Shown here: piece by piece, positions 7,106 to 27,907 of the stretch
Layout: each line of letters begins with the position of its first letter
Numbering within the stretch: the first letter of the stretch is position 1
Source: Perkinsus chesapeaki ATCC PRA-425
Taxonomy: Eukaryota > Protista > Perkinsozoa
NCBI GenBank assembly: GCA_013115145.1
Contig: JAAPAO010000051.1
Location: forward strand, 1 to 64,000
Reading direction: 5' to 3'
DNA: 64,000 nucleotides
Position numbers and translations under genes: made by a program
Notes under the pieces: model-generated
The model's input: only the letters and a program-made list of their open reading frames with translations
Told to the model about the DNA's origin: nothing
Databases searched by the model: none

Positions 7106-10100
7106 ATGGCAGTAAATCAGGGCGAGCTATCGCAGGTGATGGCAGCTACGCTGTCACCCGATCTCAACGTTAGACGACAAGCAGAGGAGAAGCTTTCACA
7201 GGTGATACAGTACTAAGATTGAGGGAACGTACCGCTGCTTCGTTAAAGAAGCCGCTGCATCGCTCGCATTTCCTGCTTCCGTCAAGTTTTGTTCGATAGG
7301 CGGAGTCCGCAGGCGGGGTTCTCACCTCGTCATTGCTACAGCTGGTGGCAAGCGGAAATGAGCAGATGCCTGTTCGATTAGCCAGCAGTATATATTTCAA
7401 GAACTTCATCAAAAGGCATTGGCCGGAGTCGCCTGATGAGGTATTCATAGGGCCTTTTGCCGGCCCTTAATGGACTACAGAAATGCACTTCAGTCACGTG
7501 GGGTTCTCTTTCAGAACGGAGGAATCTCCGAACAGAACCGTAACCTCATAAAGTCGCATCTTGTCGATCTAATGCTGTCTGTCCCACCGCCGCTTATGGC
7601 ACAGCTCCGAGAGAGCATCAAGATTATAAGCGATCTCGGTGAGCTCTACGTCAACACGTATACTTTAACAGCAGTAATCTTTCAGACTTCCCCGCTGGTT
7701 GGCCCACTCTGTTACCTACTTTGGTGCAACGACTCACCTCGGGAAATGACCTCGATGACACTCAATTTGGAGCTTTGGAGACCGCCTCTACAGTGTTCGA
7801 AAAGTGGGTTTCGCACCTTACTTCGGCAGCAGCGGCCCGCCTTATTGGTCTCCAGGTATCGCTACTTAGTGAGGTCTAACGAGGTGCTTAGAGAACTACA
7901 GTACATCTTGAAGGAGTTTCAAGAGGTACCCCGTACACTCCGGTCTCGGTATCTCCTCTGGATAGGTCCATTTGGCCCTATATAGGAGAGTAATGCAGGA
8001 AATCTTCTCACCTGCGATTAAGGAACAGAGTAGTACATGGATAGGGCGCGCTAGGACGATGATGCTATTATAGGCCAAGGTCAAAAGGCGGTGAAGTTGG
8101 CGAAGTTGCTCCTTGTTGAGCTGGAGATCTTCTACGATCTTAACGTTGTTGATATTCCTGTAAGGCTAGAGATGACCTATGCAGCCGGCTAGCATGGTTA
8201 TCACCTTGATTGGCTTCAGGAGTACTATGAAGATAACTCTGCGACATGGTTCGAGGGGTTCCTCCGTTTGTTGGAGTGGCAAGATATGCCGGCTGGTAGT
8301 ATTGGGTCAAGCAAAGGAGCTATTGTGATATACTACCACGCACACCTAGCACGCAGAACTCGTTAGTGCTTCGAGGCCCAGGACGGATTCGTTAGCAATC
8401 AAGTCTCCTGAGTTGGCTTATGTCGTTCTTGTTGGCGCTTCATATCGAGCACGAATCCATTTTCAGCCCTCAAAGCACCCGATGATGAGACGCCCGGAGC
8501 TATCGAAAATTTGAAGGCTCAAGTATGCAGGAACGTAGCTCTCTACGCAGATAAATACCAGGAACAAGTGGAACCGTAGTACTGGGAATCAGGCCTCACC
8601 TTTGTGCCATGGCTCTTATTACTATTTCGGTCTCGTTAGTTCGACTCCAAAATCTTAAGGTACATCTGTGGCGTGGTGAAGTCAGTGTGGACACTCCTTG
8701 TCTCCACCAGCCCCAACGGAAGTAACGATCAGCTGGTAAGCATTGCAACCTGCAACTCACTTGGATGGTCAGTGATCTAGGTGTCAGCAGGAATTAAACT
8801 ACTATCTAGTGCAGCGAGTACTAAGTGGGCCACAAGTCCCTTTGAAGAGGCGAATTCCCTTCAAGTGATGTCTGCGATTATCTTCTGTCAAAGTAGACAT
8901 GTCTTTCAGGCCATATGTGAGCATGTGGTGCTTCCTAACATAAAACTGCGTGACTCGGACGTCGAGGATTTCTTCGATAATCCGACAGTAAGGTGGCTCT
9001 CCCTTCAATGTGGGCAAAGTTCAATCCCTTTAGGAGTATATCAGGCGTGATATGGAGAGCGCGGATCAGGACACTCGTCGACGAGCTGCTATGGAGCTTG
9101 TTAAAGGCTTGAGCAAACTGTATGAGCAACAGGTGCTGCAGGGATAGAACGCATTTGAACCATGGTATTTATTTGCGCCTAAAGCGCTGTCTCCCCCTAA
9201 AAGACAATCATTTGCTACTGGAAATTGGTCGCTGCTTAGGTTACGGACATCTTAGTCCGCTATGTACAAATGTTGCTACAATCCGTTGGCAACTCTACTA
9301 CAGAGGATGCGTGGCGAGCGAGGGATGCTTGTGTTTATCTCATTATAGCGACAGCCGCCAAGGCACAGGTGTTAGAACTAGCGTGGGACGCATAGACATA
9401 TTGCGGATTCTTATTAGACCAGAACTAAGGGAGCCTCTATTGTCAACTCTGCAGTGGATGTCCCAGCGTTCTTCGAACAGCAATTAATGCCAGAGCTCTC
9501 GCAGGCCATCCCTACTGAGAGGGAGGCCAGCCGGGCTGTCTTCCGCGCTAGCATTCTCAAGTAAGTAAATCTCCGCACGGGTCGGTTAACGGTTACGATG
9601 CTAACATGCAGATACATCGCAGTGTTCCGGCAGCATCTCCCTGTTGAACAGCTCACTCGTGCGCTTCCTCTTATAGCAAATCATATACGAACCCCCGTTA
9701 CGGTAGTACCTGGATCCCCGTTCGTCGCCTACTCCCTTTGCACTTATAAACTAATGTTCACTTTAGGTACTGCACACATATGCCGCTCATTGTCTAACTG
9801 TTCTATTGCTACTTAAATGCCCCAATAAGCAACATAAGATACCATTAGAGACACTGAAACAGACCGTACGGCATGGGTAAAGCGTGATGGCGGTTATACT
9901 TGCTCAGGTTCTGCCTACTGTAGAGCCATGCCTCCAAATACTCGCTACTGGTGAGACTCAATCCGCATACGAAATGAAGCTCGTAATGCGTAAGTTCTTC
10001 GACACAATAGTCTTCATCATAGAGTTTATTTTGCAGGGGTGTTCTCGACCTTCAAGGAGGGAGCTTTGGGCATTGCTCTTCCAACGCTCAGGCAGCTTGC

Positions 10101-11781
10101 CACAGTAAAACTTGTCTTCCATTGTACACGCGTCTCATACGCTTTCTGGCAGATACTCCGGGCTGTGGCAGCGAATCCTAGTGATGCTGTTTTCAATCAC
10201 TATCTGTTTGAAGCTATCGCTTCAATCGTAATAGCACAACCTTATCAACCTTAATTGTGCCCTGCTAGGTACGGACTGTCCTGCAATTCGCCCCTGCTCA
10301 GCATGGGGAAGTTGAGTCGGCTCTTCTCCCTGTTATCAGCTTTATATTGGAGCAGAATGTTGCTGACTTCATCCCGTAATAAGGAGAATGCATGCGTTCG
10401 CGGAGGTTTACTTACTTTATTTAGTTATTGCTTCCAAATACTTGGCCTTCTGCTTGATTCCGGTGATAGCTCTACGTCAGCAGCTGGTCCACAGATCTAT
10501 GGTGCACTCTTTGACAGGTGAGTAGACGTGATACCGCGCAATGTCTACGCTTATGCCTGTTCTTAGGCTTCTCACTGATGGCCTCTGGAGAACCGCCGCA
10601 AATGTACCCGGGCTCATCCGATTGTTCAGCTCGTAATGAGGGCCACACTCACTGCGCTCAGCAAGTTTGATGTGTTAGATACTTCAAAAAAAATGCGCAA
10701 TTCTCGGAGCAAATTAAGCGTAACATGCAAACAATTCTCCTCCGGTTCCAATACGTAGGCCTGACAAAGAAAGATAGTCGTATTTATGAGTTGGGTTAGG
10801 TACTTAATCATCGTAAGGTCGAGATGCAAGCATTCGACCTTATTATAGCAATGTTTCGTTATCTCCCGTTCGATGCTTACAAAAAGTGAGTACCGACTTG
10901 ATACTGCTGAATGAGGTTCGCATTTTCCTGTTTAATTCAGCTCGCTTGCTGGAATATTCACAGTCTTCTTGACGAAGCTGCAAAAGAAGACTACAGCAGC
11001 GTTGAACAGAAAATTCGCTATTACGTTGAGCGTGTTCGTGTAAGTTCAGAAGCTCTTGCGGAGGCCGTTATATAAATACCGCAATCCAGATACTGTGTCC
11101 CAGAGGGCCCACGCGTCTTGCTTTCGACTTTGGAGCAAATTCAAGCTGGTCTCTCGGTAATGGTTGTGAAATCACTGTGGATGCCTGCCTTCAAGGGGAA
11201 CATGGGCGGAAAAGAGAACAAGAAGGTACTCCTGTCTTGCGTCACTTGCGGGTTGTTATAAATTACTCTGTCAGGTCTGCTTGCTCGCCGCGGCTAAGTT
11301 TGCCAACGACTCGAATGTCCAGAGCAATGGGGAGATGATGCATGCTGTAAATAACTAGTTACTGTACTCCGCGCATTTTTAATGGTAGGTTTTGATGGGC
11401 ATATCTGAACTACTCGGCTTCAATGATCAAGAGCAACAACAGGGAAACTCGCTACTGAACCCTAGGCTCAACGACGAAGACGAAGATGACCAAGAGGAAG
11501 CAGAGGACCGAGAGTAGTTCAATCGACCATTGTTTTACGACTAGTATTTGTCCGCCTAGATACGAGGTTAGCTTTGCGAGACTTCATTCCACCGAGATGC
11601 CTGGCCACGCGGATTGTGCGCCGACAATCACCGATGTTCCTGGTAGCATAAAACAGGCTTTACGCAGCATAGACGGTGAGATGGCTCTTTCATCTGAGCA
11701 TTGATCACCGATAACTCAGGTCGCTTCTTCGCCAATCCTCCTCAAGAACTGGCTCGTCTGAGTACATGGGTGAGGTCGTGA
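7106..11781 (+). CDS. CSE1: Exportin-2 / CSE1 (importin-beta family), about 20 or more exons
   Basis: Importin-beta N-domain TLSPDLNVRRQAEEKL...RLASSIYFKNFIKRHW; DFPAGWPTLLP; SNEVLRELQYIL; ICRNVALYADKYQE; IRRDMESADQDTRRRAAMELVKGL; NDAVFNHYLFEAIAS. Confidence 0.93.
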
Positions 11782-18558: not shown

Positions 18559-21500
18559 TCAAGGTGTTATGTCTAGGTATTCATTCGCCCATTGGCGATG
18601 CGCTTTTCGAGCGAAAAGCTGTTCAATCGCAGTGGGAAGGTGACCAGTAACATACTTTGAAAGCCAGGAGAAAGGAAACCATTCCCAATCAAGCATCATT
18701 CGAATTCCCCAATCCGTATCGCTGGTGGACCTAATCGAGCAGACAATATGCTCCACTTCATAATGGTGGCCCTCTACAGGTATCGGGATTCCTCTATATA
18801 GAGGTGTATCGGGCGCATGCCACGACCGTCCGCTTCACCATTCCTCTCAATACGATCGTAAGACGAGACGTGCCTCACACAAAGGTCGTCCATTTCTGGT
18901 AAACTGGTGATCAGGTTCACTGTTATAGGGAAGCACCTGAGGCCCGACAGGAAGCCTTGCTAGATGATCCAACTCTCGAAGACTCGTACTTTCGCGTCCA
19001 CGGTCGATCAGCCAATGAAGTCGAATATAGCTGCGCTCCCGCTGTGTAATTCATATTCTCATGGATTCGTCCCTGTAGTTGTGCTATGACGTCAAATAAA
19101 GATGTATTGTAATCACAAGGGATGAATCCCAAGTCTGCGTACTCCGCAAAGAAACCGAACATTCGAGACTGTTCCTGACCGGGCCATGACGGTACCACAT
19201 GCGACCTCGGTGCCATTCTCTTACCACACTGTCATCGCGGTTCGTTCGCATGAGCATCAACGGTATTGAATCCCACTCCAATGCTCGGCCAAGGCTTATC
19301 ATGACTACCGCCAAAACAACGATCTCCGTTGGAACTTGGAGCTCCTTGGCAATGATAGCCAAACCGCGGGTGGTACTGCGACTAAGCCAGAGCGTACCTG
19401 TAATTTCTTGTAACACTAAGACCGTATCATAGATGTTACGAGTTCTATTGTCAGCACTCGGCCTCCGAATCTCCATAGCCTGTCTTAAGCGTAGATATTT
19501 CTCGCTACCTTCGATACCATCGAAAAGACGGTGTTGTAGTGTCGGAAAGCAACAAACACTCGGCGGTGGAACCTAACTATCGAATGGAAAATGAAGCAAC
19601 AACGTTATGATGAAAATACCTCTCCAGTAGCAACTTGCTTTAGGACCAGGTCGAGCTCTCGAGCCATCGGTGCAACACAGAAACCGTCCGCGAACAGATG
19701 AGTGAATCGAACGTAAATATAGAACCACCGAAAAGCTGAGCCACGAAAGGCTGGACCAACTACTGAAAACGATTGGTACCTTCCGTTTTGGTATCCACAC
19801 CACGCGGGAGAAGAATATGAAATTCGATGGGTGCTGTGAATGCCTCAGTGAACTTCAGGCGAACAACCAAGTCCCTGAGAGACTTCGATGCCCTCGACTC
19901 TGATTTCGAGCTCGTGAAGTACCTACCAAAAGAATGAAGGGTCGGACTGCAAGATCGCTCACTTTTCATGTATTGGCACAATAGATTTGCTTTGCTCCTT
20001 CCGTGGACCAACCCTTGGCCAACAACTTTTTACGGCTTGTTGCACCCAAGTCGACTCGAGACCAGTTGCCGATGCTAGACTCAAGACCTCCCTACAGCAC
20101 TCTTGTAGTTCTAGTGGATCCAGTGGATAAGAGCGGAAAACTGGATGCCTGAAAAGGGTAGAATCCATACGATATGGATATTGATCATATCCACGCCTGT
20201 TCTCACCTGCTCACCAGAAGTTTCAATGCCTCTCGTATGCTCGATACAGTGGGAGGATGGCGTCTATCTGTATACTCGAACAGCCAGTCACAGGGAGCTC
20301 TCTTCCAGAGGTGAGTGGCGAACATGTTGATACGATATTCCGACGCAAGTGCGACTCCTCGTTCGGAATCTTTCTTTCCCACAGTCTTCGAATCTTCACC
20401 GTCGTCTACCTTCACCTCAATTTTCCTCGCCAAGTCGCCGAGTGTATTGCAGGCCATGACTTCTCGTGGGTTCAACTGAGATGCAGTAACCATTAGACGC
20501 AATCTTAATGAGCGTACATTAATGCCCCATCTATGTGAGGCCTTGGCACACAACAAAACCGTGCTCAGTGAGGATATCCCAGCCAGGCTACTTGTAGATG
20601 AGCAGCCACCTCTGTCCCCAGATTCCCAGCCGAGACTTTGCAGCAGAGACCCGACAATGCCCACGGTATCGCTCTCGTCAGTGGGGGAGATATTCGGAGC
20701 AGACTTTCGAGGGGGACGCCGTAACGGTGGACGAGTATTGGTACCATTGAGCTTTACGTCAACCAGCTGTATATCATCCCACAGGCAGGACTCGCATACA
20801 AACCTGACCAAATCGAAGGTGGCCATTTCATTGACCAACTGTTAACCTCACTCATATTTGCCATGTCTCTTGACTTTTTGCGAATTTTGCGTACTAGTGG
20901 AAGTTGTGGTACTATCACACGAACTAAGACTTAAAGGAATGCAGGTTGGAATAGAACGATCTGAGGCGACTCACCCATCTCGGCCTTGGGCTTTCCAGTT
21001 AACCTCAGACTCTCTCCATCGCCATTTCCCATGGCTCTCTCGGAACCAGCAGTCTTTGTTGTCTTTAGTTCTGCAGTTCTTACGAACATCACAGTGATAC
21101 CAGCGATCTCTATTCACTTTGGCGATCGGTCGTTTCTTCTTTGGCTGCCGAGCTTTTGGCTTTGGTACGTTGCCATAATTGGTGATTGCCCCAATCAGTT
21201 TCGATATCATGGAAGCTTTCTTGCTTACTGCTGCGCCTACCGACATTGACCTCGTGACTCTAGTTAATATGCCTCCCAGATACCAACAGATGAGCCGCAG
21301 AGGATTCTTCAGGTAGGGCTTCCAATTATTCCAACGCCACTGATGTGACAGGTAGATGCCGGCCTCCACTGAGCTTATCGTAGGCCAAAATAACACTTGC
21401 CTCAGTGGGAAGGTTATGCATACGAACACTAGTATGAGCATCTGAATACTCCACCATGTGTGTGCAAGGGTCACAGCCAAGCTAGCTTTGAGACAGTACT

Positions 21501-23915
21501 CGCCGTAGGGGAATGCATCCTCGAACCAGGAGATAAAGGAGGTACAAATTTGTGCGCAACTCTTGGCAAATCGCTCTAGAGAATCCTCTGTTTCAATCGA
21601 AGCACCACAAGCAGGTGACGTATCCGATTGTATAGCAATCGCAGCATAGTCCAAAAGAGGATAATAGAAGAAGATTACCAACATTAACGATAGGAATAGC
21701 GAGTAAAAGGTACCGCGGCAGATAAAATGGCCCAGGACGGAAAACACTGTTATCAACAAGAGGTGTATGGACACCCCAAGGTAAACTGCCGCACGGGACC
21801 TCGCGACCGACTTCGGCATAAGGCCTCCACCAAGTTCATAGAGTTCGCGGTAACTAGTATCATCCGGTAGAAGCCCGTCTGCGGGTTGTGCTAGAGGTGG
21901 TGGTCGGGCTGTAACCATGGAGAGCAATTCTCTCTTAACGACCTTGCCTGTTACTGGATGCGTGGGTAGCCACGCACTTGGTACGAGAAAATGCATGCAC
22001 TGGGTTGACATCCCCGGCAAACTACTACGTATAGCCGCCAATGCTCTCGGCACGCTGATACGACATGTCTGTCCAAATCTCATAACGGCATGTATTTCAC
22101 CGCCTGGAACTCCGTGATCTACGATCAACATAACTTTACTATCACCACCTAAAGTCTGAGCCATAGCATCTTCTAACATGGATATTTTCGCAAAGGCTCC
22201 ACCGACCTTGATCAGGTCACCCTCACGACCCAGACATTCCACCAGAGATCGGCAGCATCCACCGCTGGAAGCCACGAGCCTGACTACATCCTCTGTTTCG
22301 AACATCGCAGTGTGGACAGTCGTTTCATAATGTGAGGAAGGCACACCATCGCATGTGACAGAATCCGTGTTGGGTAGAGGGCCACTGACATATCCCGGTG
22401 TAACCATTCTCCCACTCATAACCATTGTCCCCGTATCTGTGGATGAACCGAGAGGCTTGGTGCTGACCTCGCATCCAGATACGATCCTGTAACGAACAGG
22501 TGGGGCAATGCCTTTAGGGCTGGTAGGCGTGCGCAAGCAGTAGAGCGATAGCCAATATCTGAGTTACATAGTTTACATCACAAAGGAACACAATAGGACA
22601 ACTACTCGGTTGCCACCAGCAGCTCTATTATCGTTGCACTTGCCCACTTGTTGACTACGGTTTGGGGACAAGCTTCACCCCAAGTAAAAACCAGCTATGC
22701 AAAGCCACCAACTAAAACTGCGAGCTTGCCTCATAACACCTACCAGTTTCTTTTCCCGTATTGTACCACCCCTGCTCCACCACTCTTCTTGAGGAGGAGG
22801 CATGGCTTCCATCAGAGTCGGCACCAGACCAGCTATAACAGTATCATATCTCCCAGACATCATGCTATATTTTATCATATTATACGGCCCCTCGGTAACC
22901 CCCATAGAGCCAAGTTTGGTCTGAGTAGGCGACGATGAGGGAATGATCTGAGAGCATCGATAGCAGGACTCTGAGCTCTGGATAGCAGCCAAGCTACGAG
23001 GGTTCCTCCGAATGCTAAGCAGATATCCACCTGTCCATAGCAACTTGCTGCCCAGTAGACACTGCCTGATAGGGTCGATACAAAGGAGTTTACCAAGCAA
23101 AAGTCTACACTTACTTGAGTTGATCACAGCAGACCTTCCGACTCCTTTCCATGTCGATGGAATAACTTCGCCGTAATTATCCAGTTCATGCATTATCATG
23201 CCTAGAGTGATGCGAACACATTTGCTACTGGCGGTCGAACCTACCAACGAGCACAACACTAGGATGGTGCAGGTGAAAGCAATGGGCTTACCTCCGGTGA
23301 AGTGGAAAGCGGCAGTCTCATCGTCATGGAAACGATGAGCAATGAGGAAGTCATCGTCACATTCCTCGCGGCCGGTAGACGATAGAATAGTCTCGACATC
23401 CACCCGATGACAATCGATGCCCGCATCGGCACCAATTAGTAGGACTGGTTCCAACAGCTGTTGCACTTGCACAGCTCTCGCTTCCTCCTGGTCTCTGGGC
23501 ACCTCAACTCCCCCACTGGTTAGGCTAACTGTTGGTATTCCGGCTAGTAAACACCCCAAGTACCTACATAGCCTTATGGCCTGAGGTGTGTCGAAGCCAC
23601 TTACACTATGTACCAATCTATTCCTCTGGTAAGGCTCAGTGCAACAGTTCTGCGAGAGCTACCACCCTCCGAGTGGAACAAGGAGTTGTTACGTAGATAT
23701 TCGTGAATGTCTACCCCACACTTAACAGCTTTTCTATAGAGTTCATCATACGTTATCTGACCTCGACAAGCCTGAGAGTCTTTGCTGTGCCATATGGATA
23801 CCTGTTTTAGGACATCTCCCTCCTGGCCCATCTCAATGGCTGCGACAGTACTCTTGTCCGATGCAGCATTCCGGAACCAGTCATTAAAGGTGGTTATTGG
23901 AGCTCGGGTACTCAT
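18559..23915 (-). CDS. Single-module NRPS-like enzyme: adenylation - transmembrane insert - carrier (T) - condensation domain
   Basis: A domain: ITYDELYRKA, VALSLTRG, AFHFTGGSTASSKCV, LVPTLM, FTWGEA, FETEDVVR, LGREGDLIKVGG, LPTHPVTGKV. Then hydrophobic helices; T: LAGISSLSTV...TLGDLARKI; C: ALKLLVSRHPVFRS, THLFADG, LAIIAKELQVPTEIVVLAV, FGFFAEY. Exons can be joined in frame with GT-AG introns of 36-51 nt at the junctions I checked. Confidence 0.82.
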
Positions 23916-24129
23916 TCCTGTTTGACTATATGTCAGCCCATCGATATGATTACCGGCATACTATACAGATGCATGCATTCCCGTAGATCCGCGAACGATC
24001 CACAACCGGAAGGGAAACAAACACAAGACGAGTGGGCCTAGAAATGTGATTATTGATATTCGGTTCAGCTAATCAAAATCATCGAGATGAAAATGCATAT
24101 CCCGACTGTAACTATTCCGCGGGAATACC

Positions 24130-24459
24130 TTACCACATCTCCCAGGGCTTGAATCCCCAGACGGCACACTGGTAGGCAAAGTCATTTTGGAACTCGTCAT
24201 CTTCGAAGTCTAAATAACCCACTTCGGCCAGAGCAAACTCTATAGGATCAACCGTGCCATCTTTATTAATCCAGCTTGGACCATTTTCGTTGTCTGGAGC
24301 GGTACCATATCTAGTAACCCTAAGGCCGTCCTTGCTGGTCTTGTCGATGTATCCATCCGTAGAGCAGATACTGCACTCGTGCTTGTCCTCACCGTGATCA
24401 CTAGCCTGAGGTTGTCCTTCGCTCCTTGGAGAAGTCTTCCTCCCAGTGTTGGTTGGCAT
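24130..24459 (-). CDS. Small intronless protein, GFKPWEMW-family copy 1 (109 aa; CxxC in N-terminal part)
   Basis: ORF MPTNTG...GPSWINKDGTVDPIEFALAEVGYLDFEDDEFQNDFAYQCAVWGFKPWEMW*; paralogy with the two neighbours supports coding status. Confidence 0.85.
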   Translation of the reverse strand: MPTNTGRKTSPRSEGQPQASDHGEDKHECSICSTDGYIDKTSKDGLRVTRYGTAPDNENGPSWINKDGTVDPIEFALAEVGYLDFEDDEFQNDFAYQCAVWGFKPWEMW

Positions 24460-24614
24460 TGAGATCAAAGGAAAGAGACCTGCGATGAGCGTAGTCCTCC
24501 TATACCGTCCAACTACAAAACTAAACAAATGTATGTAGTCTTGAAAGCATTAAATGATCCTCATCAAAGAGAATGAACTTGGCCAGGTTACCGGCCAAAG
24601 CATTTCATCAGCAA

Positions 24615-24848
24615 TTACCACATCTCCCAGGGCTTAAATCCATACATAACACACGCTTGTTCGAAATCTTCTTGGAAGTTCTCATCTTCGAAATCGCAGT
24701 GACCAACCTCTTCAATAGCGAATTGAACAGGGTCTACGGTACCATCGTCATTAATCCATCCGATGCCATTGTCCGCTGGCTCTTGGTCATTGCCTTGATT
24801 GTCGGCATATCCCTGATCATTGGCGGCTTGATTATCGTTAGAAGACAT
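24615..24848 (-). CDS. Small intronless protein, GFKPWEMW-family copy 2 (77 aa; acidic N/D/Q-rich N-terminus)
   Basis: ORF MSSNDN...GIGWINDDGTVDPVQFAIEEVGHCDFEDENFQEDFEQACVMYGFKPWEMW*. Confidence 0.85.
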   Translation of the reverse strand: MSSNDNQAANDQGYADNQGNDQEPADNGIGWINDDGTVDPVQFAIEEVGHCDFEDENFQEDFEQACVMYGFKPWEMW

Positions 24849-25156
24849 CGAGAAGGGAGATCGAACGTCCACTGAAATAATTCGAGCTCAAGTAGACGAC
24901 GAAACCGGGATGTTCTCAACAACAGTATCTTATCGGTGAGCGGATGGCTAGAGCTCCCTTGTGTGTTGTGACAGCATGTACATGGAGTGGTCCAAGCTCA
25001 CGCATTCGACTTCAAACGCAACTCAAACGAAACTAGTCAAACTAATCGATAATGGAGTATAACATGAAGTAGTGATGACGCTGACATCGAGGTCAGCCCG
25101 ACAAAGACTACAGCTGCTTTCACAGCCGCCAATGAATTACTGAGTCGCCATCGCGT

Positions 25157-25435
25157 TTAACTGTTGCCACTCCACATCTCCCACGGTTTGAAACCGTACA
25201 TGGCACAGGCATGATTAAACTTCTCATCAAAATGATCGTGACCAGGAGCGAAGTAGCCGACCTCTCTCTGGGCGAACTCGACCGGATCGACAGATCCATC
25301 CTTGTTGAGCCAGCTTGGTCCATAAGATTCTTGCTTACCGCCTCCTCTAGAAGACCCACCATTTCCTCTGGTGGCAGTACCACCGTTACTTTTGCCGCCA
25401 TTTTTACCACTGCTAGACGAGTTACCTTTGGGCAT
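25157..25435 (-). CDS. Small intronless protein, GFKPWEMW-family copy 3 (92 aa; Gly/Ser/Asn/Lys-rich N-terminus)
   Basis: ORF MPKGNSSSSG...GPSWLNKDGSVDPVEFAQREVGYFAPGHDHFDEKFNHACAMYGFKPWEMWSGNS*. Confidence 0.85.
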   Translation of the reverse strand: MPKGNSSSSGKNGGKSNGGTATRGNGGSSRGGGKQESYGPSWLNKDGSVDPVEFAQREVGYFAPGHDHFDEKFNHACAMYGFKPWEMWSGNS

Positions 25436-25873
25436 TGGATACACTGACTTAAAGATGCCGTGTGAACTAAACGAAAATCAATCAGCAAGTGCGGCATCAG
25501 GAATCAAAAGAGAGATTTTTACCAGTGTACGTTCGGCAACGGTTTCATAAATCTTACCTCGTTAGAAATCGATCATCATGGCGGTCGCGTCCGCATTTTT
25601 ATGCCAAACCGGTGATCTGCCGGGATATTTTGCGCTGACAAGTAGGAGCAAGTCGCTCATCTAATTAATAGTTGAGTCATGCTCCTTGCCGAAGGAGTAC
25701 TTATGACACCCTTACCGTAAAACTCGGACTAAAAACTGATAGAACTTACCCATAGTCGGATCTGTCGAGTATGAAACTTCGACCTCACATGGAGCACGAT
25801 CCACTCCGTCGGAAGTATATCTTCCGTCATATAGCTCTCGGGTAACATCTATGAGTACTCAGATGTGGAATGA

Positions 25874-27907
25874 ATGTATAGATTTTGGGCTTTCGTGGGC
25901 AGTTGTCTTACTGTTTTGATGGCTTTTTGGCGAGTCTTCCTTGCATGGTTGTCGGCCATGGTATGTCGTTTTCAAGCCCAAGGCACTGTATCACAACCAA
26001 TGAGGAACTTTCGTTGTCCTTTGACACCGAAGTGGACCCGGGTAACTACACCGGAACCTGGTAATAAACGGGAAATTATCGCAGATCAATTCAGTTTCTG
26101 GAAGACGTTAATACCTATAGCCGCTCAATACAGAATCTAGACTTCACCGCTGCTAAACAAGGGCTTCGTGACAGTCTTTCGCGTGCGCTAGACCCACTTA
26201 ATGAGGTACTGCCGAGAGGTATTTTGCGGGTAAAAAGATAGCACTTAGGCATTCGACTGTTCGATCGGGATAGCATCTGCGTATCGCGTATTGGCTATCG
26301 GCTACGCCGTTGGTGGAGAGGCGTTGGATGGCACTGATAAGTGATAGCTGCAAAATTGAGTAGTAGAGCTAGTGCTTCGACTAGGATTGCAGCGCGGAGG
26401 GCTTACCAGATTGCGTTACGGATGATGCATGTTGGCATGAACTGGTTAACGCATGCCTTCGTGGTTAAGGTAGCGGCCTAGACGGCGTACACATTGCCAG
26501 CTGCTCCTGGTAGGGTAAGAACGATGGTTATTGGATTGATGAGTCTGACTGGCCTATTACCATACAACAAATGAATGATGAGCAGACTGCTATACAGAAT
26601 GCTATATTGAAAAGCGGTCCGCATGGCCACACGCCAACCTGGGAAGTACACCTACTCTGTTTCTAGTTCGTGCGAGTTATCTATTTTTATAGGAGGTACC
26701 GTCGGATTTCCGAGATCATAACATCTCCATAGCGATAGTCACAATGTGCGATTACCCCGAGGGTCATGTGTAAGGCCGATCTCTTGGCTTGGGGTAAATC
26801 TTTTTAGTTTACCTCGTTATTCTCTTTCAAATAAGGAGCTGTATAGTAACAGACATGGCTATACTGTGATCGCAGAGAGCAAGAGGGATGACCCTTCCCG
26901 GCCGCATGCATGGGCCAAGGTACGGGGAGTGCCTTTCACAGTTCAAGCCAGATAATTCGGCAGATATCCTTGATGCTCAAGCACGTCAAGCAACAGACGG
27001 CCGATTGGCTCCTATGGTTCGATTGTGACACATATTTCATGGATTTGTCGAGGACGCTAGATAGTATCCTCTACAAGTAACCTAGTGGGCAAGGTGATTA
27101 TCGGAAGGCTGCTTAGATTTGGATCAGAGGTCTCCAGCGATGGTCGTCGGAGAGTTCGTGATGATTTTCATATGCTTATCCAGGAGGTGAAGGGATGCAT
27201 TGTAGGCAGTAGACCGTGAGTTGATGTCAGGACCATGCGATGCTTAATACGGGGGTATTCTTTGTGCGGACTTCTGATTGGGTGGCGAGCATGCTCACAG
27301 AAGTATATGGTGGATCGACCTCTCCTTGGATAAACCATCCATGGTAGACTGCTCAGTTTGCGCATTTTCGAGTCAGCCTCCTAGGTGGGAGAACGCAGCC
27401 TTCAGCCACTGGTTCCTTGGTTCAAACTACCAGAGGCTTGCTAATGAGAATCATATAGAATTTATGCGAGAGGCGTAATCGGTTCTTGCTTACCACTTAA
27501 GATTATGAGGGCATGTTAGCGCCTCCGATATGGACGGCATTTATCCTGAGAAGGTCATAGTCGCACCTCAAGTAGACTTCAATTCATACCACCCCATTAC
27601 CTCGAGAATCTTCCAGCATGATACCTGGGAGCCTGGTAAACTTTCATAAGGCGCCCATCCTTCGCATGCACGCTTTGATCAGGTAAGTTCGTTCTAGCTT
27701 TCTCAGGAGTTCAACAAGCCTCGTCACCAACAGTGGTGAGCGTGCTATATGGCAACTACTACAGGATAATGTGCCGGATCAATAAAGTAATGATTCGGAA
27801 TATCACAGGCATTACAGCTCTGGAAGGTTGAGGACGATTGTCTACCAGTGGAGGAGCTAGACTTGTTTCCATGGAAAAATGCATCTGGGCCCATGAACGT
27901 GAAGTGA
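25874..27907 (+). CDS. Glycosyltransferase, GT34 (GMA12/MNN10-like) family, type II membrane protein, multi-exon
   Basis: NKELYSNRHGY, RPHAWAK, DWLLWFDCDTYFMD (DxD), MLNTGVFFVRTSDW, WWENAAF, FNSYH; N-terminal signal-anchor MYRFWAFVGSCLTVLMAFWRVFLAW. Linkage of the 5' exons (25874-26700) is less certain. Confidence 0.82.

What the first reader, a model, noticed from the sequence alone, without database searches (positions are those of the whole stretch)
24130..25435. Three tandem small genes define an unrecognised ~50-aa domain ending GFKPWEMW
Seen: three same-strand intronless ORFs share G-x-x-W[IL]NxDG[TS]VDP[IV][EQ]FAxxEVG-x7-F-x3-F-x3-C-x2-[YW]GFKPWEMW, while the N-termini and intergenic DNA are unrelated and synonymous positions differ. 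Protein-level conservation with DNA divergence implies old duplications under purifying selection. I cannot match the motif to any family I know. They sit directly upstream of the NRPS-like gene on the same strand.
Basis: seen in the sequence. Interest (0 to 1): 0.82.

Follow-up and report, generated by a model that had tools for sequence, protein, structure and literature searches.

The report
Perkinsus-only small proteins, new mini-domain
Three neighbouring, expressed small genes of the shellfish parasite Perkinsus chesapeaki share a strongly conserved 50-residue folded domain that matches no known protein family or fold and was found only in the genus Perkinsus; its function is unknown.

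Summary
Three intronless minus-strand genes encode proteins of 92, 77 and 109 aa: g1 25435-25157, g2 24848-24615, g3 24459-24130. Their last ~50 residues share 24 invariant positions and the motif GFKPWEMW. The N-terminal tails and the intergenic DNA are unrelated.

Synonymous sites are saturated while non-synonymous divergence is low, so the domain is under strong purifying selection.

RNA contigs show three separate mRNAs. Each carries a spliced leader joined at an AG acceptor, and a poly(A) tail is seen for g2. The flanking DNA has no RNA coverage.

The window is Perkinsus chesapeaki. Orthologues exist only in P. olseni (g1 and g3 types) and P. marinus (g3 type plus a decayed g1 remnant). 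In all three species the g3 type lies 0.2-0.3 kb upstream of the A-membrane-T-C enzyme.

Searches of Pfam, NCBIfam, PDB sequences, 1.84 billion protein representatives, metagenome contigs and prokaryote genome contigs found no relative. AlphaFold2 gives a confident model of the domain (pLDDT 88): a hairpin turn plus three helices. It has no structural match in any library searched.

My reading is a genus-restricted, probably cytosolic protein family. A compact aromatic, acidic docking or dimerisation domain carries different disordered tails. A working link to the neighbouring enzyme is possible but not shown. Such arrays are common in this genome, so interest is moderate.

The parts
25157..25435 (-). 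g1 coding sequence, 92 aa plus stop. The tail is basic and rich in Gly, Ser and Asn, with RGG-like motifs. The domain is followed by four extra residues (SGNS).
   Evidence: ORF, translation. The ATG is the first one after the SL acceptor. The P. olseni orthologue is L001:9304-9597.
25037..25468 (-). g1 mRNA. The AG acceptor for the spliced leader is at 25468/25467. The 5'UTR is 32 nt and the 3' end lies at about 25037-25047.
   Evidence: RNA contigs of runs X1 and X2 at 100% identity, with a spliced-leader loose end at 25468. Runs X5 and X6 give partial contigs. Junction letters checked.
25172..25321 (-). g1 copy of the conserved 50-aa domain
24615..24848 (-). g2 coding sequence, 77 aa plus stop. 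The tail is acidic and rich in Asn, Gln and Asp, and the net charge is about -18. No orthologue was found at the P. olseni or P. marinus loci.
24536..24873 (-). g2 mRNA. The AG acceptor is at 24873/24872, the 5'UTR is 24 nt, and the poly(A) site is at about 24536.
   Evidence: Spliced-leader loose end at 24873 and a T-run (poly(A) on the minus strand) loose end at 24536 in run X2.
24618..24767 (-). g2 copy of the conserved 50-aa domain
24130..24459 (-). g3 coding sequence, 109 aa plus stop. This is the member kept in all three Perkinsus species, and it sits immediately upstream of the A-TM-T-C enzyme gene.
24042..24481 (-). g3 mRNA. The AG acceptor is at 24481/24480, only about 55 nt downstream of the g2 poly(A) site. 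The 5'UTR is 21 nt and the 3' end lies at about 24042.
24133..24282 (-). g3 copy of the conserved 50-aa domain
   Evidence: The AF2 model of the domain has pLDDT 87.7.
24304..24381 (-). Extra module found only in the g3 type (residues 27-52): H-E-C-S-[IV]-C followed by a predicted beta-hairpin. It is conserved in the P. olseni and P. marinus orthologues.
   Evidence: Alignment, P0010. AF2 places strands at 37-41 and 47-51 but with low confidence.
18559..23915 (-). Context: the neighbouring adenylation - membrane segments - carrier - condensation enzyme gene. It is on the same strand, and its ATG lies about 125 nt beyond the g3 mRNA end.
   Evidence: Earlier finding s1-241953. A-domain-like motifs appear in the minus-strand frames. 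Orthologues follow the g3 orthologue in L001 and L003.

Best explanation
These are three real, separately expressed paralogous genes of a protein family that was found only in the genus Perkinsus. Each protein has no signal peptide or hydrophobic segment. Each consists of a disordered N-terminal tail and a compact C-terminal mini-domain of about 50 residues. The tail differs between paralogues: basic and RGG-like in g1, very acidic in g2, and carrying a CxxC hairpin in g3. The mini-domain is an Asn-x-Asp-Gly hairpin turn followed by two helices and a short C-terminal helix formed by PWEM. It is unusually rich in aromatic residues (18-22%) and acidic. What is shown: the gene structures, the expression, the conservation, the selection, the restricted distribution, and the absence of any sequence or fold relative. 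What is inferred: the domain is a protein-binding or dimerising module that brings functionally different tails to a common partner. Three arguments support this inference. The invariant residues are mostly large hydrophobic ones, more than a 50-residue core can bury. The variable residues sit on one face of helix 2. The tails evolve freely while the domain does not. The g3 type is the ancestral, universally retained member.
For: Three discrete RNA contigs carry a spliced leader at AG acceptors and a poly(A) end, and the flanking DNA has no RNA coverage. There are 24 invariant columns. pS is saturated while pN is 0.06-0.25, and dN/dS is about 0.03-0.07 in the domain. The g3 tails diverge 3-4 times faster in pN. 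Orthologues occur in P. olseni and P. marinus only. The g1/g3 split predates speciation. The AF2 domain model has pLDDT 87.7 and pTM 0.71, while the tails score below pLDDT 50. F35, F39 and C43 are spaced i, i+4, i+8 on helix 2. No family or fold match was found.
Against: No partner, ligand or localisation is known, so the docking or dimerisation role rests only on composition and the conservation pattern. The AF2 model uses six closely related sequences, and I could not inspect its coordinates. Cytosolic location is inferred only from the hydrophilic N-termini. Two of the three P. chesapeaki genes are missing from public annotation, so unannotated small ORFs in other alveolate genomes could have escaped the protein-database searches.
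Confidence: 0.5

Rival explanations
1. The small proteins, at least the g3 type, are dedicated partners of the neighbouring membrane-anchored A-T-C enzyme. They could be an activating or chaperoning subunit of its very divergent adenylation domain, working like bacterial MbtH-like proteins without being related to them. Alternatively they could be an acceptor substrate, for example through the invariant Lys of GFKPWEMW.
For: The g3 type lies 0.2-0.3 kb upstream of the enzyme on the same strand in P. chesapeaki, P. olseni and P. marinus. Synonymous sites between these species are saturated. In P. marinus the upstream neighbours (Aa_trans, GT34) are absent within 10 kb, yet the g3-enzyme pair persists. 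The protein is small and has three invariant Trp, as MbtH-like proteins do (established knowledge of PF03621). The enzyme's A domain is so divergent that Pfam barely detects it.
Against: Downstream synteny is also conserved (enzyme, orf16182, DUF3712), so adjacency may simply be inherited gene order. Gene neighbourhood carries little functional information in most eukaryotes. No MbtH Pfam hit was found, and the predicted fold is helical rather than a beta-sheet plus helix. The earlier follow-up agent reported the enzyme in dinoflagellates, whereas the domain was found nowhere outside Perkinsus and never fused to another protein. The SL libraries contain the small mRNAs but no enzyme mRNA, although those libraries favour short cDNAs.
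Confidence: 0.17
2. The domain is a low-affinity Ca2+-binding module: a single 'F-hand' (EF-hand loop plus exiting helix, as in dockerins) that pairs by dimerisation.
For: The segment W-[IL]-N-x-D-G-[ST]-V-D-P-[IV]-E-F fits EF-loop positions 3, 5, 6, 8, 9 and 12. The predicted helix starts at loop position 10. There is a weak EF-hand_5 hit at E=0.17. The loop following the first helix is very acidic in g2 and g3.
Against: Loop position 1 is an invariant Trp, not Asp. Position 3 is Lys in P. olseni g3 and position 12 is Gln in g2. There is no entering helix. No EF-hand or dockerin structure scores significantly: the dockerin 2vn5 has TM 0.22 and GCAP-3 has Z 2.5. The same short motif occurs in unrelated beta-propeller-type and beta-trefoil repeats, so it is a common turn.
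Confidence: 0.1
3. They are precursor peptides of a ribosomally made natural product. The invariant C-terminus would be the core peptide, and the neighbouring enzyme would tailor it.
For: The ORFs are small, lie in tandem next to an assembly-line-type enzyme, and end in an invariant octapeptide.
Against: The conserved part is a confidently predicted folded domain with an aromatic core, not a short core peptide. The would-be leaders are not conserved. The g1 type carries four extra residues after the final Trp in both species, so a free C-terminal Trp is not required. No protease, cyclase or other RiPP-type gene was seen nearby.
Confidence: 0.03
4. They are not independent genes. They would be chance ORFs, upstream exons of the enzyme gene, or pseudogenes.
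For: Two of the three are absent from the public annotation of this genome.
Against: Each has its own spliced-leader acceptor and 3' end in RNA contigs from two studies. All reading frames are intact, selection is strongly purifying, and orthologues exist in other species.
Confidence: 0.01

Closest known systems
EF-hand / dockerin-type 'F-hand' calcium loop (Pfam EF-hand_5 PF13202 and relatives)
   Same: A 12-residue loop-like segment with Asn/Asp at positions 3 and 5, Gly at 6, a hydrophobic residue at 8, Asp at 9 and Glu at 12. A helix follows, starting at position 10.
   Different: Position 1 is an invariant Trp. Positions 3 and 12 are not conserved across members. There is no entering helix and no second loop. 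The Pfam score is far below threshold, and no structural match was found.
MbtH-like proteins (PF03621), small partners of NRPS adenylation domains
   Same: Proteins of about 70-110 aa with invariant tryptophans, encoded next to an adenylating assembly-line enzyme.
   Different: No sequence match. The predicted fold is helical. The family is eukaryotic and genus-restricted. No evidence of binding exists.
Other Perkinsus-restricted tandem arrays of small genes noted in this genome (e.g. s1-225866)
   Same: Tandem, expressed, partly unannotated small genes confined to the genus Perkinsus, of unknown function.
   Different: Those proteins carry signal peptides or other motifs, whereas this family has none. 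This family shares a distinct 50-aa C-terminal domain and keeps a fixed position next to the A-TM-T-C enzyme.
Delta-60-type and other repeats carrying [ILV]-N-x-[DE]-G-[ST]-[LV]-D-P (HMM hits P0003-P0008; Symfoil beta-trefoil designs in the PDB)
   Same: The short N-x-D-G-[ST]-V-D turn motif.
   Different: Only 8-18 residues match. In those proteins the motif is repeated many times in long beta-rich chains. The rest of the domain has no counterpart there.

Membership tests
EF-hand (Pfam clan, e.g. PF13202) | Profile score above the curated cut-off | tested here: not met
   The best hit is EF-hand_5 at 11.9 bits against a cut-off of 25.9, E=0.17, in one of five members only.
EF-hand (Pfam clan, e.g. 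PF13202) | Canonical loop: Asp at position 1, Asp/Asn/Ser at positions 3 and 5, Gly at 6, Glu at 12 | tested here: not met
   Position 1 is an invariant Trp. Position 3 is Lys in P. olseni g3, and position 12 is Gln in g2.
EF-hand (Pfam clan, e.g. PF13202) | Helix-loop-helix fold, normally paired | tested here: not met
   The AF2 model has no helix before the loop and only one loop. No EF-hand structure scored significantly in Foldseek or VIA-align.
MbtH-like protein (PF03621) | Sequence signature and profile match | tested here: not met
   No Pfam hit even at E<=10.
MbtH-like protein (PF03621) | Three-stranded sheet plus helix fold | tested here: not met
   The predicted domain is a hairpin turn plus three helices. 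No MbtH structure appears among the PDB matches. The reference MbtH fold is taken from established knowledge.
MbtH-like protein (PF03621) | Encoded beside and binding an adenylation domain | tested here: inconclusive
   The adjacency is conserved in three Perkinsus species. Binding cannot be tested with these tools.
RiPP precursor peptide | Conserved leader or recognition sequence plus a short core that is excised and modified | tested here: not met
   The N-terminal parts are unrelated. The conserved part is a confidently folded 50-aa domain.
RiPP precursor peptide | A mature modified peptide is produced | not testable with these tools
   This needs mass spectrometry.
New Perkinsus 'GFKPWEMW' domain family (proposed here) | C-terminal ~50 aa with W-x-N-x-[DN]-G-x-V-D-P-x-x-F-A-x-x-E-V-G ... 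F-x3-F-x3-C-x3-G-F-K-P-W-[ED]-M-W | tested here: met
   All six intact members from three species have it. HMM E-values are 3e-30 and 5e-28 for the two database representatives, and the next hits match only the turn motif.

The most novel reading that the evidence does not exclude
The family, above all the universally retained g3 type, is the dedicated protein partner of the unusual membrane-anchored A-TM-T-C enzyme next door. It would act as an activator or chaperone of the enzyme's degenerate adenylation domain, or as the acceptor of its product. That would make it a eukaryotic, independently evolved counterpart of MbtH-like proteins, built on a previously unseen fold.
Probability: 0.15. Interest if true: 0.7.

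Novelty: categorically new. Interest (0 to 1): 0.36.

Why it matters
The result defines a new, confidently foldable protein domain with no sequence or structural relative. It corrects or adds five gene models across three Perkinsus genomes. It also gives base-level evidence for spliced-leader trans-splicing and tight poly(A)-to-acceptor spacing at a tandem array. If the domain proves to be the partner of the neighbouring membrane-bound assembly-line enzyme, it would open a way to study that enzyme's function in parasites that damage shellfish aquaculture. As it stands, this is one of many genus-specific small-gene families in this genome, and its biological role is unknown.

Tried and rejected
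- **Pfam and NCBIfam scans** of all members at E<=10 gave only a sub-threshold EF-hand_5 hit.
- **Word-indexed protein search with g2 alone** returned no candidates. The index missed even P0001, so this blank meant little. The search with an alignment worked.
- **HMM search of 1.84 billion representatives** gave only two true hits. Six further hits matched only the short turn motif inside repeat proteins and were rejected as relatives.
- **PDB sequence profile search** gave nothing credible. The best hit was a solute-binding protein at E=0.022, and the rest were Symfoil designs matching 8 residues.
- **Structure searches.** I ran Foldseek against PDB and AFDB clusters with both models. With the domain model I also ran the ESM Atlas shape search and VIA-align wide. 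The results were E>0.8, TM at or below about 0.5 on short stretches, and best Z 2.8.
- **ESM Atlas feature search** gave scores of 0.72 or less (unnamed clusters) and 0.56 or less (named clusters), which is noise level.
- **Back-translated pattern scans** of JGI metagenome contigs and of prokaryote genomes found no relative.
- **Reaching enzyme homologues outside the genus**, to inspect their flanks, failed. The length filter returned only P. marinus entries, and L004 is identical to L003.
- **Rfam** on the whole window found nothing.
- **Literature searches** for the P. marinus locus tag found no paper.

Full report
**Observation**

The minus strand of 24130-25444 holds three ORFs. I call them g1 (25435-25157, 92 aa), g2 (24848-24615, 77 aa) and g3 (24459-24130, 109 aa). 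Their C-terminal ~50 residues align without gaps and share 24 invariant positions: W, N-x-DG-x-VDP, FA, EVG, F, F, C and GFKPWEMW. The N-terminal parts do not align.

Within the window the three copies find each other by tblastn at E 1e-17 to 1e-22, and there is no fourth copy. The only repeated DNA in 23900-25900 is the last 36 nt of the domain, at 81% identity.

Across the 50 domain codons, paralogues show third-position identity of 0.28-0.42. Synonymous differences are saturated (pS 0.75-1.0), and pN is 0.23-0.25.

**They are real, separate genes**

I laid public RNA contigs on 22500-26500. This gave exactly three islands of coverage, all at 100% identity: 24042-24481, 24536-24873 and 25037-25468. 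The flanks, including the start of the neighbouring enzyme gene, had zero depth, so DNA contamination is unlikely.

At the 5' end of each island (minus strand), the contigs of two runs continue into the reverse complement of CCGTAGCCATTTTGGCTCA. This is the dinoflagellate/perkinsid spliced leader. The genome reads AG at each junction (24481/80, 24873/72, 25468/67), and two of the three junctions follow a T-rich stretch. No other similarity to the leader is present there, so mispriming is unlikely.

The leader in the contigs is the DinoSL variant. Perkinsus leaders differ from it by one base (PmaSL1, PMC3101222). These libraries are RT-PCR libraries, so the leader letters themselves probably come from the primer.

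A T-run loose end at 24536 marks the g2 poly(A) site. No joints were seen, so the genes are intronless. A second study (runs X5 and X6) also holds parts of g1 and g2.

The first ATG after each acceptor gives the protein starts above, with 5'UTRs of 21-32 nt and 3'UTRs of about 80-120 nt. The g2 poly(A) site lies only about 55 nt from the g3 acceptor.

**Organism and distribution**

An exhaustive HMM search with the domain against 1.84 billion representatives found two true hits.
- P0001 is a Perkinsus chesapeaki hypothetical protein. It is g1 with a mis-predicted N-terminal extension, which identifies the window's organism.
- P0002 is a P. olseni protein.
- The six other hits match only 14-18 residues around the N-x-DG-[ST]-[VL]-DP turn, many times over, in long repeat proteins. 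They are not relatives.

A profile-seeded search added P0010 from P. marinus. Scans of metagenome contigs and prokaryote genomes with back-translated motifs found nothing.

The exact g2 and g3 proteins are absent from the 15-billion-protein collection, so they are unannotated.

**Orthologous loci**

- *P. olseni (L001/L002).* A g1 orthologue lies at 9304-9597. It is unannotated in two assemblies and fused with g3 in the model P0009 of a third. A g3 orthologue lies at 10001-10351. The enzyme gene follows from about 10656.
- *P. marinus (L003).* An intact g3 orthologue lies at 10001-10342, followed by the enzyme from 10631. A g1-like remnant at 9493-9624 has lost the Trp, DG, VDP and GFKPWEMW positions.
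- *g2.* It has no orthologue at either locus.

A tree of the six domains separates the g1 type from the g3 type with full support. g2 sits on a long branch in an unresolved position within the g3-type group. The g1/g3 duplication therefore predates the divergence of these species.

Even between orthologues, synonymous sites are saturated (pS 0.66-0.96). Domain pN is 0.06-0.12, with dN/dS of 0.03-0.06 where it can be computed. The g3 tails have pN of 0.27-0.41.

**What the protein looks like**

No member matches Pfam or NCBIfam. The only hint is EF-hand_5 at E=0.17 on the NKDGTVDPIEF stretch of g3.

AlphaFold2 on full-length g3 gives a disordered tail (pLDDT<50) and a structured C-terminus. The domain alone, with six sequences, gives pLDDT 87.7 and pTM 0.71. 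It has a beta-bridged turn (residues 9 and 15), a helix at 17-25, a helix at 33-45 and a short helix at 50-53.

F35, F39 and C43 are spaced i, i+4, i+8 on helix 2, and the variable residues fall between them. This suggests that the invariant Cys is a core residue rather than a catalytic one.

The domain is 18-22% aromatic and carries a net charge of -4 to -12. The tails differ: basic and RGG-like in g1, strongly acidic in g2, and with a conserved H-E-C-S-[IV]-C plus hairpin module in g3. None has a hydrophobic N-terminus, so I infer a cytosolic location.

No structure search gave a significant match. I searched Foldseek PDB, AFDB clusters, ESM Atlas and VIA-align wide. The best results were E>0.8, Z 2.8 and TM about 0.5 on short stretches. 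PDB sequence profiles and Atlas feature searches also gave nothing.

**Interpretation**

The following points are shown directly:
- There are three expressed paralogues.
- They share a strongly constrained novel domain.
- Their tails evolve freely.
- The family was found only in Perkinsus.

The mechanism is inferred. A 50-residue domain cannot bury some ten large invariant hydrophobic residues, so part of them probably forms a binding or dimerisation surface. The domain would then act as a common docking module for three different tails. I give this reading a confidence of about 0.5.

**Link to the neighbouring enzyme**

I saw A-domain-like motifs in its frames.

The g3-enzyme adjacency is kept in all three species, although the upstream Aa_trans and GT34 genes are missing within 10 kb in P. 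marinus. Downstream synteny is kept as well, so inherited gene order explains the adjacency equally well.

The earlier follow-up agent reported relatives of the enzyme in dinoflagellates, but no relative of the domain was found outside Perkinsus, and no fusion was found anywhere.

The analogy with MbtH-like proteins is attractive: a small Trp-rich protein beside an adenylating enzyme. It fails both the sequence and the fold tests. I give the partner or substrate hypothesis about 0.15-0.2.

**Other readings**

- *Calcium binding.* A single F-hand-type site is possible but weakened by Trp at loop position 1, Lys at position 3 in one orthologue and Gln at position 12 in g2.
- *RiPP precursor.* This is unlikely, because the conserved part is a folded domain and the g1 type has four residues after the final Trp in both species.

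**Novelty and interest**

By sequence and predicted fold the domain has no known relative, so it does not belong to any described kind. Functionally it is an orphan. This genome holds many genus-specific tandem arrays of small genes, so a specialist would not be greatly surprised. Interest is moderate. It would rise sharply if binding to the A-TM-T-C enzyme were shown.

**Limits**

- I could not search eukaryotic genome assemblies in six frames. Small ORFs are often unannotated, as two of the three are here, so absence outside Perkinsus is provisional.
- Read laying could be used only once. I did not rank expression levels, and the libraries favour short cDNAs.

Noticed in passing
window 25435-25760 (minus strand): The public gene model for g1 (P0001, KAF4675160.1, 115 aa) adds a 23-residue N-terminal extension through a predicted intron. 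The RNA contigs instead show a spliced-leader acceptor at 25468/67, so the protein starts at the ATG at 25435. g2 and g3 are not in the public protein collection at all.
   Followed up: yes
L001:9304-9597 and P0009: The P. olseni g1 orthologue (97 aa) is unannotated in two assemblies. In a third assembly it is fused with the g3 orthologue into a 246-aa model (KAF4693096.1), apparently by a false intron.
   Followed up: partly
L003:9493-9750: P. marinus keeps only a decayed g1-like remnant, about 41% identical over 44 aa, with the Trp, DG, VDP and GFKPWEMW positions lost. It is a likely pseudogene. The g3 orthologue 400 bp downstream is intact.
   Followed up: partly
window 24481-24536: Only about 55 nt separate the g2 poly(A) site from the g3 spliced-leader acceptor. 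The g1-to-g2 gap is about 165 nt. This spacing would fit coupled polyadenylation and trans-splicing of a polycistronic precursor, which was not tested.
   Followed up: no
window 25470-26250: A GT34-like gene lies on the opposite strand upstream of g1. By blastn it matches window ~26247-27454, corresponding to L002:7324-8558. g1 is therefore the first gene of a same-strand run (g1, g2, g3, the enzyme, then a SpoVS-like gene) that starts at a strand-switch region.
   Followed up: no
window 18559-23915 versus L001 and L003: The A-TM-T-C enzyme evolves much faster between Perkinsus species than its neighbours. It is 36-53% identical, compared with 85% for Aa_trans, 80% for orf16182 and 75% for orf13541. 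Pfam does not detect its AMP-binding domain in the window's ORF pieces at E<=0.001.
   Followed up: partly
L003 versus L001, upstream of the small genes: The amino-acid transporter and GT34 genes that precede the small genes in P. chesapeaki and P. olseni are not within 10 kb in P. marinus. There a Surp/WW gene lies 2.6 kb upstream instead, so a rearrangement or deletion has occurred next to the array.
   Followed up: partly
RNA contigs of runs X1 and X2 at 24481, 24873 and 25468: The leader letters on the contigs are the DinoSL form (…CCATTTTGG…), not the published Perkinsus forms (…CCATCTTGG… or …CCATCTGG…, PMC3101222). In these RT-PCR libraries the letters are probably primer-derived, so they do not reveal the true P. 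chesapeaki leader sequence.
   Followed up: partly
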